Shown here piece after piece: positions 45,641 through 55,187 of a stretch of 64,000 nt of DNA; the first letter of the stretch is position 1, and each line of letters begins with the position of its first letter. The translations under genes and the position numbers were made by a program. This DNA comes from Salpingoeca rosetta (lineage: Eukaryota; Protista; Choanoflagellata): the NCBI GenBank assembly GCA_033442325.1, contig JAWQFM010000005.1, positions 469,701-533,700 on the forward strand. Direction: 5' to 3'. The notes below the pieces were generated by a model, which made no database searches, was not told the origin of the DNA, and saw only the letters and a list, made by a program, of their open reading frames with translations.

Positions 45641-48600
45641 ATGGGCTGCTTCCAGCTGCCACTGACAGCGGAAGGCTTGAGGTGAGTGTGCCACACGGAC
45701 AACCAAAAACCAGCACACACTCGCTCGCTCGCGTGTGCTTGTGTGCGTGTGTGTGTTTGCGTGCGTGTGTCGGGGTATGGAAGGTTCGAATGCCGATGTG
45801 CGATGGAGCACCTTGCCACACGCGATTGCCTTGTTCCAACCTACTCACGCCACCGTGTGTTTGTTTTGTGTGGGCCTGCAGAGCTGTCGTTGGCGATGAA
45901 GATGATGCGGTGCAAGTGGTGTCCTTCGTCGGACACTCGCGCGATGGGCACTCGTGTACAGCAGCTCTCATCAACACCATCATTAACAACGACATCATGC
46001 TGGTGGGTGCGTGCGTATGTGTGTGCATGTGTGTGCGTGCGTGTATGTGTGCATGTGTGCGTGTGTGCGTGTGTGCATGTGTGCGTGTGTGCGTGTGTGC
46101 ATGTGTGCGTGTGTGCATGTGTGTGTGTGTGTGTGTAACATTCATGCACACATTTTTGCCTGTCCTCCTCTTAACCCTCCCCTCCCCTCCCCCCACTGCC
46201 CACTCCCCATCTCACCTCTCACCCGTATGCTCTCTTCCCCTATGTCCTCCAATGCCGCCCACGATGTCTCGTTCTTGCTTGAAATGGGCCCTCTCCCAAA
46301 CCCAACAGCCAAGCACAACTTCGCCTGTTGTACAGAGTGGAACATCATCAGGAGCCTTGGATGCTTGCAGCACCCCCACCACCAACGTCGGTTCCGTGCA
46401 TCTGGGCGCTCCTCATGCACTTTCTGCGTGGACTTGCTCGTGAGACACCTTTAGCGCCCAACAAACGCGTTTTTGCTTGCATAACCCACGCGCTCACTGT
46501 GAATGCACTGGTTCGTCGCCATGTGCGACATGCCTGCGCGATTTCAGGTGGAAGCGTTCTATGACAAGACGAACCGAACCATCTTCCTTTCCTTGAGCGC
46601 CGCGCAGGACCCGGCCGCACTTCTCGCGCTCGCAGACACACTACTGTCAGCCCCGCAGGAGGTCTGTGTCAGTGACCATGCATTCATCCGTGCGTTTGGT
46701 GCATGAAGGAGTGAGCATTCGTGTGTGTGTATGTGTGCGTGTGTGCATTTGTGTGTGTGTGTGTGTTTGCGTGCTTACGCAGTTAACTTCGCTGCATAGT
46801 CTCAAGTCCTGCATTTTGGCTTGCCATGCACGACCACGTGGCACGCTCTGACTGTCCCAGTTGTTCCCACCGTCATCAATTATTCACACATACGTTTACA
46901 CATCCACACACACACACACACACATACACACACGCACATGTTCAGGAGCATGCGAGGCTGTTGCAGGACAAGGACAGCCACTACCTTCGCGCCATGTTGT
47001 TCTTGTTTCTCGTTTCCACCACTGTTGTCATGGTGAACGCATCGCATGGCCTGGACCCATCAAGCCTGCAGCTGCTGCGTGCCTTGGAGGCACTCAAGAA
47101 AGCCCTGATGGTGTGTGTCCTTCCTTCTCCATATACACATTCAACCCACAAACCCACAATCTGTGTTGCGTGTATCGTGGCTACTTATCAATCTTGTGTC
47201 TGCCGCGAACTTGCACGCCAATCTCATGATGACGCACATCTCATGATGGCGGCTGCCTACCGTGGTTGTTGATGTCAATGTGGTTCCATTGCTTCCCCTT
47301 GTTGAACAACAGGACCAACACGATGGCGATGCGTTTCTCCACAGCGGCCGACTGCCATCACTGCTGGTCCTCGCTCAGCCGTCCCTCACTGTGCGCCACA
47401 CCCCGGCCAACCTCAACGGGTTTCACAAGGTGCGGGCGGTATGGAGAGAGCAACACACGCCCTGAAGAGTCATGTCACCGTCTCGCCTCTGTGTCATGCA
47501 TTTCATTTTTCTGCGCATGTAGATGCACACACACACACGCGCGCGCACACACTGCTCATTCACTTGCTGTCTCTCCCTCTCATTCCCGCGCAGATGCATG
47601 AGAAGCAGGCGCTGGAGTTGCTGCGCTTGTCGTCGCTGCGGAGTGTGGGCGACCCTGCTGCAACGCATCCCGCCTTTGAGCGCCTCTTCCGGCGACCAGG
47701 ACCGAACTTCCTCTTCATCCAGCCACGCGACGCCCCGCGCCTCGCAGCAAACGCATCGCGTGTCCTTGACCCCGTCGTGTCGCTGCTGGACCGGTTCAGT
47801 CTCCCGCTGCACACCATCACAGGCAGTGCATTCACGCTCCAGGGTGAGTTTTGTGAATGTGCAGAGGTGAACACAGCAAAGCACGTCGCAGCTCTGCTGC
47901 TGCTAACATGACATACACACACACACACACCCTCACACACACACACACACACACTTACGCATTCACACACACACATGCCCCCACGCCACTCGACATGTTT
48001 CAGGTGCCGGGCCCCACATGCGCGATGACGACGGCGCCGCAGATGATGATGATGATGATGACGATGATGACGATGCGTTGGAGGAGAGCGTGCCGCAGCT
48101 CGGGGCCAATCTCCTCGGGCGACTGCTGCAGGGCGTGCAGACAATAGCAGACACGGACCTCGCCGCCGCGTTCACTGCACAGGCCGTGGACGCGGGCGGG
48201 TTGGACGCGCGCGGTGGCAGCACAGGCCTGTATGCATCTGCGACGTCGTTTTTGAGCGAAGCAAACCGGCTCTGCGGGTTGCTGTTGGCACGTGGTGTGC
48301 ATCACGACGCCTGTGGTGCAGCCAACGCGACTTCAGACGGCGGTGTCAAGGGTGATGGCCATCATCACGCTCAGCCCTCATCCACCTTGACCACCGGTCC
48401 CCAGCTAGCGGCAGACAGCACGCCCGTAGCGTCTCGCGCCAATGCGATATCAAATGTCTTGTCGACGCACAGCGTTGAGGCGTGCGAGCGCGCGTTGCCA
48501 CAGGCGCTCAACCAATATCACATCAACCTCCCGCCCGTGTACTCGCGGCACGTACACCGGGAGCACCTGGCCAAGGCCATCGCGGTGTTTGCCGTGCTGG

Positions 48601-50329
48601 CACAAGGGCCCCATGTGCACCGCTTCCTCTCGCTTCTTTCCCAGCAGTGTGATGAGGTGTGTCGCTTTTGTTTTCCTGTATATGTGCGCTCATGCGTTCA
48701 GCCCACCAGCGTGTATGCATGTGCTTGTCGGTGGGTGTGTACGCATATGCTTGTATGTGTGCATGTATGCTTTTCAGCCGTGCTCGATCTCTTGTGTTGC
48801 ATGTATCATCGCCTCTTCTAAACCCCTCTCCCTCCACGGCACTGAACCCCACCCCCGGCACACATTGCATCATGCCCTGGTCATATGTGACTGCAGGTGT
48901 GGACGGCAGGCCGTCGCCAGTGCGAGCGCCTCAGCATGACCCACCACCCGTGCGTGCATGCGGTGCACAGGACCCCGGCCGATGCACGCCAGCTTGTTGA
49001 CCTCGGGTCTGTTGCTGTGCGCGAGCATGACAGCGGCGTTCGCTTGCGCTGCGCGTGTGTCTGCGGCCGATCGCAATCCGACATTCCAGACGCATTTCAT
49101 ATCAGCGAGGTGCACGCTACAATCGTGTTTTATGTCTGCGCGTGTGCGCGTGTGCTTGTTGTGTGTGCTTTGCGCCTTGTGTGGTTTGAGTGCCGCGTAT
49201 TTGTCTTTCTCTTGTGTTGTCATTCTACACGCGTGACCACAACCCTCATTCATCCACGCCCCCCTCTCTCACCACCCATCCTTTCTGTTGTTTTGCACCA
49301 GATCAACCGGTTTGCTGTTGAGGCTGCCTGCTGCCGCGCGTGCATATCCGCCGTCCTTCCCCTGGAAACACGCGACGCCAAGCAGCACAAACCAGCGCCC
49401 TCGCTCTCTTCCTCCTCCTCGTCATCGCTGAGCAGGCCGCCCCGCCAAGTGCACGCAGCTGATGCCGCTGCTGTTGATATTGGAGACGCAAGTACAATGC
49501 CGTTTGGAACGCCCGATCAGGGCATCGCTGCCATGGACGACGTGCGTATGTTTTGCCGTGCAATGCCTGTTTTGCTGGTATTCGTGCTTGCACATGCATG
49601 CACTTGCTGGTTTATGTGTGTGTGTGTGTGTGTGTACGTGCTTGTACATGCATGCACTTGCTGGTTTATGTGTGTGTGTGTGTACGTGCGCGCACTCTTG
49701 TGCGTGTGTGCTTGTACTTGTGTTGTGGGATCATGTGCTTGCGTGGTTTGTACTGATTCGAGTGTTGCCCCCTTGCCAACGGAATGCATGCAGGCCCCAA
49801 AGCCGCCCGCGTGCTTCTGCGTGTACCGCATTGGGGACGGCGCGAGCTACGTGCCGCGATCAGGTATGCACATGCACGAGGTGGCTGTGGTTGTGGTTGT
49901 GGTTGTGGTTGTGGCTGTCTTGTTCTTGTTCTTGTTCCAAATGGTTTTGTGGACATCATGTGTTGTGGTGGTGCCGTTGTCGCTCTGCTTTAGTACTTAC
50001 AGTGCGCACGTGTGTGTGTGTGCATATTACGCTGGACGCAGGGCTGGCGGAACAGCAAGGGTTCCTGCCAGGCTGCCAACACCTCCTCCCTTATGCAATC
50101 TACAGCAGGTAGGTGTTGCGGAAGCGTACGCTCACTCATTTTTGCCCGGCTGTCTGCTCTCAGTGATACGTTGATGCCGTGCTGACACGTTGGAATGCCA
50201 CGTGCGCCTGTGTTGTGCAGGAAGGGTCGCCAACAACAACAGCAACAGCAGCAGCAGCCGTCATCCCTCACGCGCCGACAGCGACACCGAGGTACGCGTC
50301 AGAGGGCGGGTTATGCGTTGACGTGTTCA

Positions 50330-50782: not shown

Positions 50783-50995
50783 NNNNNNNNNNNNNNNNNN
50801 NNNNNNNNNNNNNNNNNNNNNNNNNNNNNNNNNNNNNNNNNNNNNNNNNNNNNNNNNNNNNNNNNNNNNNNNNNNNNNNNNNCTTGGGAATTGTATAAAG
50901 GGATTTTGTTCCCCCGATTGGAGAGACAAGTTTTGTTATGAGAAATAGGTGCGGCCTTGGGGAGTAACTAAATGGGACACACACACACACACACA

Positions 50996-52499: not shown

Positions 52500-52742
<243 letters not shown>

Positions 52743-52842
52743 NNNNNNNNNNNNNNNNNNNNNNNNNNNNNNNNNNNNNNNNNNNNNNNNNNNNNNNNNN
52801 NNNNNNNNNNNNNNNNNNNNNNNNNNNNNNNNNNNNNNNNNN
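52743..52842. other. Assembly gap (100 N)
   Basis: N run. Confidence 0.99.
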
Positions 52843-52853
52843 ACACACACACG

Positions 52854-52914
<61 letters not shown>

Positions 52915-52928
52915 ACACACACAAGGGT

Positions 52929-53635
52929 TCAGGTTGGGTTCTTCCAGATGACGTTGGTGTAGAGCATTTGCTGCGGCATTGCCAACTGTGTTGGCACATC
53001 ACGTCTCAAGTCACTCGTGAACAGCATTTGCTGCGGTATTGCGTGGCGCTGCCTGCCTGCCACTGGCAGAGGTGGCTGCTCAGGCTGCGCCTCCGCCACC
53101 ACAGCAGTTCCAGTACTGCGCTCGCGCTTCTGCTTCATGTGCTTGAGCGACGTCTGCAACCTCGCAACATCCGGGTGGCCCTTGCCCAAGTTCTCCTCCT
53201 TGATGCTCAGCGCCTCGTTGTAGTGCCGCGTTGCATCGCTGTCCTCCGCAAGCTCTGCCAGCACATCTGCCAGGCGCTCGTGGCTGTTGGCTGCGTCGAC
53301 GTGGCGGCCACCGAGCAGCTTCACGCGCAGCGCAAGCGCTTCCCTGTGCGTGGCCGCCGCCTCTTCAAGCCGCCGCGCACCGTGAAGGGAGGTGCCGATG
53401 TTGTTGAGCGACGTTGCAACCTGCACGCTCTCCGGCCCGTGCACGCGCTTCAAGGCCGCCATGGCCTCCTTGTGCATGTCGACTGCTGCGTCGTGATCGC
53501 CCTTGCTGTCGAGTACTTTCCCCGCGTTGTTCAGCAGCGCTGCCCGCAGCAACAGCACTTGCTCGGCGTCGGCATTCTTGCCATCGCAGCTATCATCATT
53601 TCCACTGTTGTTGCTGTCATCACTCTCGTCGTAAT

Positions 53636-53670
<35 letters not shown>

Positions 53671-55187
53671 CTGTGGTTGTTGCTGTGGTTGTTGTTGCTG
53701 CCGTCATCGCCACTGTTCTCGTCATTGCTGCTGCTGCTGCTGGACTCGAGGGTGCGCATACGGTCCCACGCCTGGTCGAGCACAGCCTGCGCCTCACGCG
53801 CCTTGTGCTGTGCCAGCAGCAGGCCAGCGTGGTTGTTGAGTGCGCTGATGACCTTGGTGTCTGACGGCGAGAGCTTGGCATCGTAGATGTCCAGTGCGCG
53901 CCGCACATTGGCAATTGCGGCGTCGATGCGGTCAAACTGGCCCTGCACGACAGCAACCTGCAAGCACACGTGCGCATACGCGAGCGACTGCTGATCAGGG
54001 TGACTTGGGAGCGCAGCCTCTGCCGCGTCAAGATACCACTGCCTGAGCTTCTCCTTCACGGCGTAGTTGAAGGCGGAAAAGCCCATGCCGCGGCGGATCG
54101 TGCCGGCAATCATGGTTGCGTCGCTCTGCTTGGTCGCCTCGGCCTTCTCTGCGTCGATGCGAGCGAGCGCTGTTGGCAGCGCAGAGAAGTCTGTCAGAAT
54201 TCCCTCGTGCATGAGCGCCTGTTGGGCGCGTGGCACGCGCACCTCAAACGCCGCCGTCTGCATACCGCAGTTGATTTCCCACAGGCACCACGACCGCTGC
54301 AGAGGCACGGGGTCGTACCACGGGGAGAAGATCACGGCGACGCGACCAATGTCATCAATGGCGGAGGAGAACGTGTTGCTCCAGAAGTCGTGCGGCAGCG
54401 CCGTGGTCGACACCTGGTTGTTGCACACGAGGTCGAACCAGAAGTAGGTCGCTGGGTCCTCTGCTGCCATATCCTGCATGACGCTGGCCACTTCCTCAAA
54501 CGGGAAGCGCCAAGCGTGCGAGATGAACACGGTGGCACGCCCAACCAGCGATCGAGCACCTTGCCCTTGCTGTTGCTGCGTGTTGTTGGTGTCGTGCAGG
54601 CGTCGGAGCTTCGCTCTGATACGGGCCGAGGCGTCCGCGTAAGAAGCTGCGGTGCGCTGCTTGTCCGTGTCGCTTCGAATGGCAGGAGTGGTGTGTGATG
54701 GTGGCTCGTCTGACTGCGATGATGTAGGTGTGTGGGTGTGGGCGTCCTCGTCAGCGACATCCCTGTCGCCGTCGTTATCCGCGGTGACCTCCTCTACCGC
54801 AGTGTCACCGCGACACAGTGACGGCAGCAAAGATCGAGGGCGCAGGCGCCCTGAACGCGGCTGTCCCGGACTGCTTCGTGTGCCACGTGACGCATCCGCT
54901 TGCGTCACTGCGCGCGTGATGAGCTGCGCGAAAGAGCAATCGCTTGCGAATGTGGCGGGAACAACCACATGCTGGCACACGTCTGCCGTTGTCCACGCCT
55001 TCTTCGATGCCTTCTTCGATGCCTCATCCCCGGTTTTCTCCTGCTGCTGATCTTTGACCTTGAGGGCCTGCACTTCTTCCAAGAGCAAGTTGATCACCCT
55101 GATGTCAACGCCAGTCGTCAAGTAGCCGTTTCCATCGTGCTCAAGAGACGCGTACGACGTGCGATCCCGACTGGCACCCACGCCCAT
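52929..55187 (-). CDS. Intronless 752-aa protein: MGxxxS N-terminus, TIR/HET-like domain, kinesin-light-chain-type 42-aa TPR array
   Basis: Single long ORF; motifs TTADVC, ATVFISHAW, YFWFDLVCNNQ, PLQRSWCLWEI; TPR units such as VATSLNNIGTSLHGARRLEEAAATHREALALRVKLLGGRH and ALSIKEENLGKGHPDVA. Confidence 0.88.

What the first reader, a model, noticed from the sequence alone, without database searches (positions are those of the whole stretch)
52929..55187. Membrane-targeted TIR/HET-like enzyme fused directly to a TPR array: candidate NLR-like immune receptor lacking a NOD domain
Seen: an intronless 752-aa ORF among intron-rich genes. It starts MGVGAS (MGxxxS myristoylation consensus), carries VFISHAW...WFDLVCNNQ...RSWCLWE, then 5-6 42-aa TPRs, with no P-loop/NACHT between them. 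Established: FISY and S-x-WC-x-x-E mark the first strand and catalytic-Glu helix of TIR NADases; SHxW, W-x-D-x-x-C-x-x-Q and R-x-W-x-x-x-E mark the related fungal HET cell-death domain; 42-aa TPRs are sensor domains in fungal and bacterial NLR-type receptors. Inference: a one-component sensor-effector (ligand-gated NAD+ cleavage or cell death) at a membrane, with the putative catalytic Glu intact (~54275).
Basis: partly seen in the sequence, partly recalled or inferred. Interest (0 to 1): 0.78.

Follow-up and report, generated by a model that had tools for sequence, protein, structure and literature searches.

The report
Myristoylated TIR-like enzyme domain on TPRs
This choanoflagellate gene joins a hidden, divergent relative of the TIR immune-signalling (NAD-cleaving) domain, with the key glutamate intact, directly to TPR repeats and a lipid-anchor signal; it is the conserved odd-one-out of a family of about 66 copies whose activity nobody has tested.

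Summary
The 752-aa ORF (window 52929-55187, minus strand) is real. It is Salpingoeca rosetta PTSG_01684, annotated "hypothetical protein". All quoted motifs are present, there is no Walker A motif or NACHT domain, and 4-5 TPR units plus a cap are detectable.

Residues about 215-395 are invisible to Pfam at threshold (TIR_2 E 0.03; no HET hit). Three other lines place them in the TIR superfamily:
- Two AlphaFold models (pLDDT 82 and 88) rank TIR domains first in Foldseek and VIA-align (SARM1, TIR-1, RPP1; Z 7-8).
- A profile-profile comparison with canonical S. rosetta TIRs gives P 5e-5, against at least 0.08 for 21 scrambled controls.
- That alignment puts invariant Glu304 on the TIR catalytic Glu.

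The domain family is very large: 3,966 cluster representatives, plus 65 further loci in this genome, all 10 tested being domain+TPR with no NTPase. This gene and its orthologues (Microstomoeca roanoka and one unnamed) form a separate, conserved lineage. That lineage has an MGxxxS start, no intron at the family's intron site, degenerate TPRs and a private C-terminal PQQMLF motif pair. Paralogues start MA.. but end in PH domains or CaaX boxes, so membrane targeting is a family theme.

NADase activity, immune role and lipidation are untested. The scan already found this family at other loci.

The parts
52929..55187 (-). Whole ORF, 752 aa including the stop codon at 52929-52931. It is Salpingoeca rosetta PTSG_01684.
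   Evidence: It is 100% identical to P0001 apart from the 78 nt that the annotation splices out.
55170..55187 (-). MGVGAS, an N-myristoylation consensus (Gly2, Ser6).
   Evidence: Read directly from the sequence. The orthologue P0002 starts MGAVVS. 34 of 151 family proteins start MG, and 32 of those fit MGxxx[STAGCN].
54882..55130 (-). N-terminal helical segment (residues ~20-102) with the family motif TTxDVCxxxxxPxT. In compact homologues it is contiguous with the core.
   Evidence: pLDDT is above 90 with helices at 29-50, 67-79 and 86-102. The segment is conserved in the A1/A2 consensus and in the first exons of paralogues.
54672..54881 (-). Lineage-specific disordered insert (residues ~103-172). 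It contains the annotated 78-nt in-frame intron at 54794-54871.
   Evidence: pLDDT is below 50 for residues 113-166. The GT..AG boundaries were read. P0001 lacks 26 residues here.
54003..54545 (-). TIR-like core (residues ~215-395): four detected beta strands alternating with helices (beta-A to beta-D) and a helical C-terminal part.
   Evidence: AlphaFold models have pLDDT 82.4 and 87.7. VIA-align matches: SARM1 TIR Z 7.8, rmsd 2.9 over 112 aa; TIR-1 Z 7.2-7.3; RPP1 Z 6.8-7.4. Foldseek's top hits are plant TIRs at E 0.035-0.1. hhalign against S. rosetta TIR_2 exons gives P 5.3e-5. Pfam TIR_2 is sub-threshold at E 0.032.
54276..54278 (-). Glu304 codon, the last residue of W300-C-L-W-E304. This is the putative catalytic Glu at the TIR alpha-C position.
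   Evidence: Glu304 is invariant in 82 of 82 aligned family members. It aligns with the conserved Glu of the C-x-x-E motif in canonical TIRs.
53745..53999 (-). TPR units 1-2 (residues ~397-481). Unit 1 is detected; unit 2 is inferred.
   Evidence: The unit HMM hits residues 405-434 with i-E 3.8e-4. Unit 2 rests on the 42-aa periodicity read from the sequence.
53568..53744 (-). Ser/Asn/Asp-rich low-complexity insert (residues 482-540) that splits the TPR array.
   Evidence: Imperfect 6-, 12- and 15-nt DNA repeats lie at 53635-53701.
53118..53567 (-). TPR units 3-5 plus a half-unit cap (residues 541-690), of the kinesin-light-chain type (TPR_10/TPR_12).
   Evidence: Pfam TPR_12 E 1.7e-23 and TPR_10 E 9e-19. 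Unit HMM hits at 549-577, 584-619, 625-662 and 667-680.
52932..53117 (-). C-terminal tail (residues 691-752) with two copies of [IM]P[QE]Q[MV][LM][FY], at residues 717-723 and 737-743.
   Evidence: The motif occurs only in PTSG_01684, P0002 and P0003 among 156 family proteins and 19 paralogues.

Best explanation
PTSG_01684 is a peripheral-membrane, one-chain sensor-effector protein of the TIR superfamily.

Shown:
- A ~260-aa domain, made of an N-terminal helical segment plus a flavodoxin-like core, has the TIR fold and carries the TIR beta-A (VFISHAW), beta-B (FWFD) and alpha-C (W-C-L-W-E) motifs.
- Trp250, Asp252, Pro293, Cys301 and Glu304 are invariant across the family.
- The domain is fused directly to kinesin-light-chain-type TPRs, with no NTPase between them.
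- The protein starts with an N-myristoylation consensus.
- The domain family is huge in protists and has at least 66 loci in S. rosetta. This gene belongs to a separate, conserved orthologue lineage.

Inferred:
- The core is an N-glycosidase that cleaves NAD+ or a related nucleotide, using Glu304 as SARM1, plant and bacterial TIRs use theirs.
- Like those enzymes, it needs self-association to be active.
- The TPR array holds it off until a peptide or protein ligand binds. In this lineage the conserved C-terminal PQQMLF motifs may occupy the TPR groove.
- The myristoyl anchor concentrates the protein on a membrane, where clustering switches it on.
- The output would be NAD+ depletion or a nucleotide signal used in defence or cell-state control.
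For: Fold:
- Two independent AlphaFold models are confident (pLDDT 82.4 with pTM 0.80; pLDDT 87.7).
- In an all-against-48,161-chain VIA-align search, TIR, ThsB and nucleoside 2-deoxyribosyltransferase (NDT) chains hold most of the top 30 rows (about 27 of 30; about 28 of 30). The best is SARM1 TIR at Z 7.8, rmsd 2.9 A over 112 residues.
- Foldseek's first hits are plant NLR TIRs.

Sequence:
- hhalign of 82 family domains against 10 canonical S. rosetta TIR_2 exons scores 35.1, P 5.3e-5, over 86 columns.
- That alignment pairs VFISHAW with VFLSYTW, FWFD with TWMD, and WCLWE with YCRKE.
- Reversed and 20 column-shuffled controls score 7.6-15.7.
- TIR_2 is the commonest Pfam hit among 23 domain-only members, at 5 of 23 and all sub-threshold.

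Conservation and family size:
- W250, D252, P293, C301 and E304 are invariant in 82 sequences.
- 3,966 cluster representatives match at E<=1e-3.
- 65 further loci exist in the genome.
- 10 of 10 paralogue ORFs tested are domain plus TPR_10/12 with no NACHT or NB-ARC.

Membrane theme:
- MG starts are enriched in the family.
- The 19 paralogues read start MA.. (apart from doubtful upstream Mets).
- At least 5 of them end in PH domains that pass the Pfam cut-off.
- 6 end in CaaX-like boxes preceded by an extra Cys: CCSVL, CCSIL, CCGMQ.

Orthologue lineage:
- PTSG_01684, P0002 and P0003 (Microstomoeca roanoka) form a clade with support 99, apart from the S. rosetta expansion.

Precedents from the literature:
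- Sensor-effector proteins without a NOD: SARM1 (ARM-SAM-TIR).
- HET plus a lectin-fold domain, as in het-B (PMC10890737).
- The bacterial NADase-TPR protein BcTpr (bioRxiv 10.1101/2023.05.26.542521).
Against: - No enzymatic, localisation or expression data exist for this protein or for any family member.
- The Pfam TIR models do not reach threshold (15.2 bits against a cut-off of 28).
- A profile search of PDB sequences finds no TIR.
- Foldseek E-values are only 0.03-0.1, and VIA Z of 7-8 is in the range that tool reports as common for models without clear relatives.
- The hhalign probability is 67%, not above 95%.
- Many animal TIRs that keep the fold are scaffolds rather than enzymes.
- I could not inspect model coordinates, so I cannot show that Glu304 lies in a pocket.
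- This gene's TPRs are few, degenerate and not diversifying, and it is conserved between genera. That pattern suits a housekeeping or hub role better than a pathogen receptor.
- The TPR autoinhibition and the PQQMLF pseudo-ligand ideas are pure inference.
Confidence: 0.5

Rival explanations
1. The domain is a non-enzymatic TIR-like assembly or adaptor module. It would mediate homotypic oligomerisation with the ~65 paralogues or with the canonical TIR proteins of S. rosetta, as MyD88, MAL and TRIF TIRs do. The invariant residues would be structural, and the TPRs would recruit partners to a membrane platform.
For: - MyD88, TIRAP, TRAM and TRIF scaffold TIRs score almost as well as enzymatic TIRs in the fold search (Z 5-7).
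- S. rosetta has more than 30 canonical TIR_2 loci that could be partners.
- This conserved single-lineage gene could act as a hub for the expanded paralogues.
Against: - Glu304, Trp300 (near-invariant across the 82 sequences), Asp252 and Cys301 are kept across very divergent protists. That is the pattern of enzymatic TIRs.
- Scaffold TIRs often lose the Glu (established knowledge; not tested here).
Confidence: 0.2
2. The domain is a TIR/NDT-superfamily glycosidase or transferase acting on a substrate other than NAD+. Candidates are a nucleoside or nucleotide, cADPR, or RNA/DNA with 2',3'-cNMP production. The role would be metabolic or signalling rather than NAD+ depletion.
For: - Nucleoside 2-deoxyribosyltransferases and related nucleotide-processing enzymes match with Z 6.0-6.7, tied with TIRs.
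- The family-specific N-terminal helical segment and the invariant Cys301 have no counterpart in SARM1.
- A TIR-fold cADPR hydrolase (Raw) has been reported (PMC13455253 abstract).
Against: - Sequence-level similarity is to TIR_2, not to NDT families.
- The S/R-x-W-C-x-x-E context is that of TIR alpha-C. The comparison with the plant WCLxEL motif is recalled from memory.
Confidence: 0.15
3. It is a true member of the fungal-type HET cell-death domain family. The protein would then be a HET-TPR incompatibility or cell-death protein.
For: - With a relaxed hhalign setting, three blocks align collinearly with the two S. rosetta proteins that UniRef names 'Heterokaryon incompatibility domain' proteins (PTSG_09133 and PTSG_09132): SHAW with SHRW, WFDxxxNNQ with WIDWACINQ, and RxWCLWE with RPWCLVE. 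P is 0.0046.
- Dyrka et al. 2014 reported HET homologues in choanoflagellates, haptophytes, stramenopiles and green algae (PMC4986451).
Against: - Pfam HET gives no hit at E<=10 for the query and for 0 of 23 family members.
- hhalign probability is only 2-8%, weaker than against canonical TIRs.
- The HET-annotated S. rosetta genes are a different tandem pair on another contig.
- The ESM Atlas neighbours carry no HET label.
Confidence: 0.1

Closest known systems
SARM1 / C. elegans TIR-1 (ARM-SAM-TIR NADase)
   Same: - It is the best structural match to the core: 9hq0_A Z 7.8, rmsd 2.9 A over 112 aa, and 8p2m_A Z 7.2-7.3.
- It has the W-x-x-x-E catalytic helix motif (recalled from memory).
- It is a one-chain sensor-effector in which a helical-repeat domain regulates a TIR without any NOD.
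   Different: - Domain order is reversed here: the TIR-like domain is N-terminal and the repeats C-terminal.
- There is no SAM oligomerisation domain.
- The repeats are TPRs, not ARM repeats.
- About 12% identity.
- Pfam TIR models are not met.
- The query has an extra N-terminal helical segment and a lipid-anchor signal.
Plant TIR domains of TNL/TNP receptors (RPP1, SNC1, RPS4, RUN1)
   Same: - They are the top Foldseek hits.
- They are N-terminal TIRs followed by a repeat sensor. TNPs use TPRs (PMC9153377).
- They share the S-x-W-C-L-x-E type alpha-C motif (recalled from memory).
   Different: Plant receptors have an NB-ARC switch between the TIR and the repeats. Here there is none.
Fungal HET domain proteins (PF06985), including non-NLR forms such as Bh (HET + lectin fold, het-B)
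   Same: - A remote TIR relative with three collinear blocks.
- Large lineage-specific gene families (about 125-132 loci in Podospora anserina).
- Occurrence with TPR repeats, and also direct fusion to a recognition domain without a NOD (PMC10197012, PMC10890737, PMC4986451).
   Different: - The Pfam HET model does not match.
- Profile similarity to HET-annotated S. rosetta proteins is weak.
- The biochemical activity of HET is itself unknown (reviews of 2023 and 2025).
Bacterial BcTpr-type NADase-TPR proteins (BcTir/Tpr anti-phage system)
   Same: An N-terminal NAD+ glycosidase is fused directly to a C-terminal TPR domain that tunes its output. The architecture is reported as widespread (bioRxiv 10.1101/2023.05.26.542521).
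   Different: - No sequence relative of the S. rosetta domain was found in 185,579 bacterial and archaeal genomes by the pattern-plus-tblastn scan.
- The bacterial system works with a separate TIR partner.
- The source is a preprint.
Paralogous S. rosetta 'tetratricopeptide proteins' (for example PTSG_11051 and XP_004987959)
   Same: The same domain, including the N-terminal segment and all invariant residues, followed by TPR_10/12 repeats.
   Different: - Only 37-46% identity in the core.
- An intron after NNQ.
- MA.. starts.
- 3-10 near-identical 42-aa units that are detectable as 126-bp DNA repeats.
- C-terminal PH or CaaX ends.
- No PQQMLF motifs.

Membership tests
TIR superfamily (Pfam TIR_2 PF13676 / TIR PF01582) | Match to a curated TIR profile above the gathering score. 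| tested here: not met
   TIR_2 scores E 0.032, 15.2 bits against a cut-off of 28, covering residues 220-310. It is sub-threshold in 5 of 23 family members.
TIR superfamily (Pfam TIR_2 PF13676 / TIR PF01582) | Flavodoxin-like alpha/beta fold with parallel strands beta-A to beta-E, closest to solved TIR structures. | tested here: met
   AlphaFold pLDDT is 82-88. DSSP detects four strands alternating with helices, not the fifth. TIR, ThsB and NDT chains dominate the top of two VIA-align searches (Z up to 7.8) and two Foldseek searches. The scores are moderate.
TIR superfamily (Pfam TIR_2 PF13676 / TIR PF01582) | Collinear beta-A, beta-B and alpha-C sequence motifs, with the conserved alpha-C glutamate. 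| tested here: met
   hhalign against canonical S. rosetta TIRs gives P 5.3e-5 over 86 columns and aligns E304 with the TIR Glu. Scrambled controls give P>=0.08. E304 is invariant in 82 sequences.
TIR superfamily (Pfam TIR_2 PF13676 / TIR PF01582) | NAD+ glycohydrolase or cyclase activity that depends on the Glu. | not testable with these tools
   This needs a biochemical assay.
HET domain (PF06985) | Match to the Pfam HET profile. | tested here: not met
   No hit at E<=10 for the query and for 0 of 23 members. For comparison, the HET-annotated PTSG_09133 scores E 0.0099.
HET domain (PF06985) | Profile-level homology to HET-annotated proteins over the three conserved blocks. | tested here: inconclusive
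   hhalign against PTSG_09133 and PTSG_09132 gives P 0.021 over blocks 1-2 and P 0.0046 over all three blocks in register with a relaxed setting. Probability is only 2-8%, and the template has just two sequences.
HET domain (PF06985) | The isolated domain induces cell death. | not testable with these tools
   This needs expression experiments.
NLR / STAND receptors | A central NACHT or NB-ARC NTPase (Walker A) between effector and repeats. | tested here: not met
   No Pfam NTPase domain, no G-x4-GK[ST] motif, and none in 10 paralogues.
Kinesin-light-chain-type TPR proteins (TPR_10 / TPR_12) | 42-aa TPR units that match TPR_10 or TPR_12 above threshold. | tested here: met
   TPR_12 scores 83 bits against a cut-off of 30.1, and TPR_10 scores 67.3 against 27.5.
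N-myristoylated proteins | Met-Gly start with a small residue at position 6 (MGxxxS/T). | tested here: met
   The query starts MGVGAS. The start is shared with orthologue P0002 and enriched in the family. Whether the lipid is actually attached is not testable here.

The most novel reading that the evidence does not exclude
The unannotated TIR-like-TPR family would be a protist-wide innate-immune or self-recognition repertoire that works without a NOD and operates at membranes. It has at least 66 genes in S. rosetta and thousands of clusters in haptophytes, green algae and other protists. Expanded paralogues with diversifying 42-aa TPR units and PH or prenyl anchors would be the sensors. The conserved myristoylated PTSG_01684 lineage, whose C-terminal PQQMLF motifs would plug its own TPR groove, would be a common helper or amplifier NADase, much as helper NLRs or SARM1 act downstream of sensors. 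[quoted passage not shown]
Probability: 0.2. Interest if true: 0.85.

Novelty: new variant of a known kind. Interest (0 to 1): 0.6.

Why it matters
TIR domains are the enzymatic core shared by bacterial, plant and animal immunity. Surveys of choanoflagellate immunity counted only TIRs that Pfam can see and listed Ank, Arm, SH2 and kinase partners. TPR does not occur anywhere in that paper's text (PMC6040629).

A cryptic TIR-superfamily branch with about 66 copies in S. rosetta and thousands of protist clusters would change that inventory. Its features are an intact catalytic-type Glu, direct fusion to TPR sensors without an NTPase switch, and three alternative membrane anchors.

It would also give a tractable system for asking what HET/TIR-like domains do biochemically. 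S. rosetta is said to be transfectable (from memory). This locus is the cleanest member for bench work: it has one exon, a conserved orthologue and a single lipid anchor.

Tried and rejected
- Pfam and NCBIfam on the whole protein gave only TPR hits.
- phmmer and profile hmmsearch of the domain against PDB sequences found no TIR. The first profile (A1) was swamped by TPR tails.
- A six-frame search of the genome with Pfam HET found nothing and the controls were silent, so it is uninformative. A DNA pattern for W[IV]DxxCIxQ then found the two HET-annotated genes.
- The ESM Atlas returned only unnamed eukaryotic clusters (Haptophyta, Chlorophyta). The nearest named cluster (HNOB, 0.76) is probably chance.
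- No bacterial or archaeal relatives turned up in a scan using one peptide pattern with tblastn confirmation, which has limited sensitivity.
- A literature search for the locus tag, and for S. rosetta + TPR + TIR + expansion, found nothing.
- The careful maximum-likelihood tree did not finish in the time allowed. Only the quick tree is reported.
- I rejected 'NLR-like receptor' as a family assignment because no NOD is present.
- I rejected a transmembrane anchor: the maximum Kyte-Doolittle 19-residue mean is 1.03.
- Paralogues were analysed exon by exon (open frames by reference).
- I could not obtain fungal HET sequences or model coordinates, so a broad HET profile comparison and a pocket inspection were left out.
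Full report
**Observation**

The window is Salpingoeca rosetta DNA. The ORF at 52929-55187 (minus strand; 752 aa, ATG start) is present exactly as described. It is 100% identical to NCBI 'hypothetical protein PTSG_01684' (P0001, 726 aa).

The 26-residue difference arises because the public model removes a 78-nt in-frame GT..AG intron (window 54794-54871). That intron lies inside a linker that AlphaFold predicts to be disordered. 'Intronless' is therefore uncertain, but neither isoform loses a domain.

Motif positions are MGVGAS 1-6, VFISHAW 220-226, WFDLVCNNQ 250-258 and RSWCLWE 298-304, with the Glu304 codon at 54276-54278.

Pfam sees TPR_12 (E 1.7e-23) and TPR_10 (E 9e-19) in residues 548-690. 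A unit HMM built from paralogue repeats detects units at 405-434, 549-577, 584-619 and 625-662, plus a half unit at 667-680. One more unit (441-481) is inferred from periodicity only. A 60-aa Ser/Asn/Asp-rich insert (482-540) splits the array.

There is no Walker A motif, no NACHT or NB-ARC domain and no transmembrane-like stretch.

The stop codon abuts an (AC)n microsatellite and a 100-N gap. The C-terminal tail is conserved in orthologues, so the end of the ORF is genuine.

**What the N-terminal domain is**

Curated libraries do not recognise it. The only Pfam signal is a sub-threshold TIR_2 hit (E 0.032, 15.2 bits against a cut-off of 28, residues 220-310). HET does not appear even at E<=10. 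Sequence and profile searches of PDB sequences find no TIR.

Three independent lines nevertheless place it in the TIR superfamily.

1. Structure.
   - An AlphaFold model of residues 1-400 built on 82 homologues has pLDDT 82.4 and pTM 0.80. Disorder is confined to residues 1-18 and 113-166.
   - A core-only model has pLDDT 87.7.
   - Both show alternating strands and helices: beta 220-223, 249-251, 282-286 and 313-317, with helices between them.
   - Foldseek against the PDB puts plant NLR TIRs first (SNC1, RUN1, RPP1, RPS4), but only at E 0.035-0.1.
   - VIA-align against 48,161 representative chains gives SARM1 TIR at Z 7.8 (rmsd 2.9 A, 112 aa), C. elegans TIR-1 at 7.2-7.3 and RPP1 at 6.8-7.4. 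Hydra TRR-2, MyD88, SpbK, ThsB and nucleoside 2-deoxyribosyltransferases follow at 6-7.
   - The Z values are middling by that tool's own calibration. However, most of the top 30 rows in both searches belong to the TIR/ThsB/NDT group.

2. Profile-profile comparison.
   - The genome holds more than 30 canonical TIR_2 loci.
   - hhalign of the 82-sequence family domain against ten of those exons scores 35.1 (P 5.3e-5, probability 67%) over 86 columns.
   - It pairs VFISHAW with VFLSYTW (beta-A), FWFD with TWMD (beta-B), the beta-C strand, and WCLWE with YCRKE. Glu304 therefore falls on the conserved TIR glutamate.
   - A reversed template and 20 column-shuffled templates score 7.6-15.7, with P>=0.08.

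3. Pfam across the family.
   - TIR_2 is the commonest Pfam hit among 23 domain-only members (5 of 23, best E 0.0078). HET hits none.

**Relation to HET**

Dyrka et al. 2014 reported HET homologues in choanoflagellates and aligned an S. rosetta protein 'annotated as HET in Pfam' (PMC4986451).

A DNA pattern for W[IV]DxxCIxQ found exactly two adjacent genes on another contig, PTSG_09132 and PTSG_09133. UniRef names both 'Heterokaryon incompatibility domain' proteins. The better one scores E 0.0099 on Pfam HET, which is sub-threshold.

Against these two proteins the family aligns weakly: P 0.021 over blocks 1-2, and P 0.0046 with all three blocks in register under a relaxed setting. Probability is 2-8%.

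The measured similarity to canonical TIRs is stronger. I call the domain a separate TIR-superfamily branch. The literature held here says that HET itself still has no known activity or structure (PMC10197012, PMC12881547, PMC10890737).

**The family**

- phmmer of the core against 1.84 billion cluster representatives returns 3,966 hits at E<=1e-3 and 2,068 at E<=1e-10.
- ESM Atlas neighbours are unnamed eukaryotic clusters, with Haptophyta and Chlorophyta the commonest taxa.
- A scan of bacterial and archaeal genomes found none, though its sensitivity is limited.
- W250, D252, P293, C301 and E304 are invariant in 82 aligned members. F221, S223, H224, A225, W226, Q258, R298 and W300 are nearly so.
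- A conserved helical segment with the motif TTxDVCxxxxKPxT precedes the core in compact homologues. In PTSG_01684 a lineage-specific disordered insert separates that segment from the core.

Within S. rosetta a six-frame search finds 65 further loci. These match as two separate pieces, and the 19 loci read show the break directly after NNQ. The query lacks that intron.

All 10 paralogue open frames tested are domain plus strong TPR_10/12 arrays, with no NTPase.

Paralogue TPRs are visible as 126-bp DNA tandem repeats of 72-87% identity and 2-10 copies. In 141 extracted units, variability concentrates at positions 12, 15, 19 and 22-24 of the 42. The query has no DNA-level repeats, and its units match the paralogue HMM only weakly.

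A quick maximum-likelihood tree places PTSG_01684 with P0002 (unnamed ENA sequence, 76-77% identity) and P0003 (Microstomoeca roanoka, 65-66%) in a clade with support 99. That clade is separate from the S. rosetta expansion, where 12 copies are nearly identical. The query is only 37-46% identical to its paralogues.

Paralogues were handled exon by exon by reference.

**Membrane targeting**

- The query starts MGVGAS and its orthologue P0002 starts MGAVVS.
- In the family, Gly is the commonest second residue (34 of 151). Of those 34, 32 fit MGxxx[STAGCN], and many have nearby Cys.
- The 19 paralogues read start MA(N)DD.. instead and carry other devices at the C-terminus.
  - PH domains above the Pfam cut-off occur in at least five, with two more PH-like tails.
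  - CaaX-like ends preceded by an extra Cys occur in six..GGCCSVL four times..RCCSIL and ..GCCGMQ.
  - Two have Cys-rich hydrophobic tails.
- The query has none of these. It ends with two copies of [IM]P[QE]Q[MV][LM][FY], a motif found only in its orthologues.

Three different membrane-targeting solutions in one family make membrane association a likely functional requirement. Actual lipidation is untested.

**Mechanism**

Shown: a TIR-type fold and motifs with an invariant Glu, direct fusion to TPRs, a lipid-anchor consensus, and a conserved orthologue lineage inside a huge expanding family.

Inferred:
- Glu304-dependent cleavage of NAD+ or a related nucleotide.
- Activation by self-association on a membrane.
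- Control by the TPR array, possibly with the C-terminal PQQMLF motifs acting as an intramolecular pseudo-ligand, by analogy with autoinhibitory peptides in kinesin light chains (from memory).

Precedents for TIR-type effectors wired directly to a sensor without a NOD:
- SARM1.
- The fungal HET-lectin protein Bh (PMC10890737).
- The bacterial NADase-TPR protein BcTpr (bioRxiv 10.1101/2023.05.26.542521).

This gene is conserved and has degenerate, non-diversifying TPRs. It is therefore less likely to be a pathogen sensor than its paralogues, and may be a hub or housekeeping member.

Rivals: a non-enzymatic adaptor, a glycosidase acting on another nucleotide, or a true HET member.

**Context and novelty**

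Neighbouring ORFs give no immune context. Smg8/Smg9 exons lie at 48018-50174, and the other neighbours have no Pfam hit.

The main survey of choanoflagellate TIR proteins lists Ank, Arm, SH2 and kinase partners, and the term TPR does not occur in its text (PMC6040629). No paper held here names this locus.

The scan has already flagged paralogues of this family at other loci of the same genome. Follow-up agents reached the same reading: about 63-66 copies, a TIR-like fold and a conserved Glu. My results agree and were obtained independently.

What this locus adds is the divergent, conserved, myristoylation-type lineage and the family-wide membrane-anchor pattern.

**Verdict**

This is a new variant of a known kind: an unannotated TIR-superfamily branch in a NOD-less TPR fusion. 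It is biochemically untested.

Noticed in passing
G000:C25:197510-203138 (L039, L040): A tandem pair of genes, PTSG_09132 and PTSG_09133, that UniRef names 'Heterokaryon incompatibility domain' proteins. Their motifs are VSHRW, WIDWACINQ and RPWCLVE. One copy (PTSG_09132) has Gln in place of the Glu (WCLVQR) and SHHH in place of SHRW. Pfam HET is only sub-threshold (E 0.0099).
   Followed up: partly
G000:C17:75074-75469 (-): One copy of the TIR-like domain lies inside a stop-free open frame of 9,024 aa. This could be a giant gene or a fused gene. I did not examine it.
   Followed up: no
G000, 38 places listed (for example L021-L032): S. rosetta has more than 30 canonical TIR_2-matching loci that are separate from the cryptic family. 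One (C23:1193998-1194303, minus strand) lies about 2 kb downstream of paralogue L020 on the opposite strand.
   Followed up: no
L020 (G000:C23:1189898-1193299), first exon: This paralogue has an in-frame TAA just before FWFDL (..SSKT*FWFDL). It may be a pseudogene or a sequencing error. Its C-terminus ends ..GCCGMQ.
   Followed up: no
window 52500-52923: An (AG)121 microsatellite, a 100-N assembly gap and an (AC)40 microsatellite lie directly 3' of the stop codon. Other 100-N gaps are at 3780-3879, 23969-24068 and 50783-50882.
   Followed up: partly
window 48018-50174 (+): Two ORFs match consecutive parts of Pfam Smg8_Smg9 (E 5e-11 and 2e-16). They are exons of a nonsense-mediated-decay factor gene upstream of the finding.
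   Followed up: no
P0010-P0015, P0055, P0096: Several metagenomic homologues of 900-2,150 aa contain two or three copies of the TIR-like domain in one predicted protein. These are either tandem-domain proteins or fused gene models.
   Followed up: no
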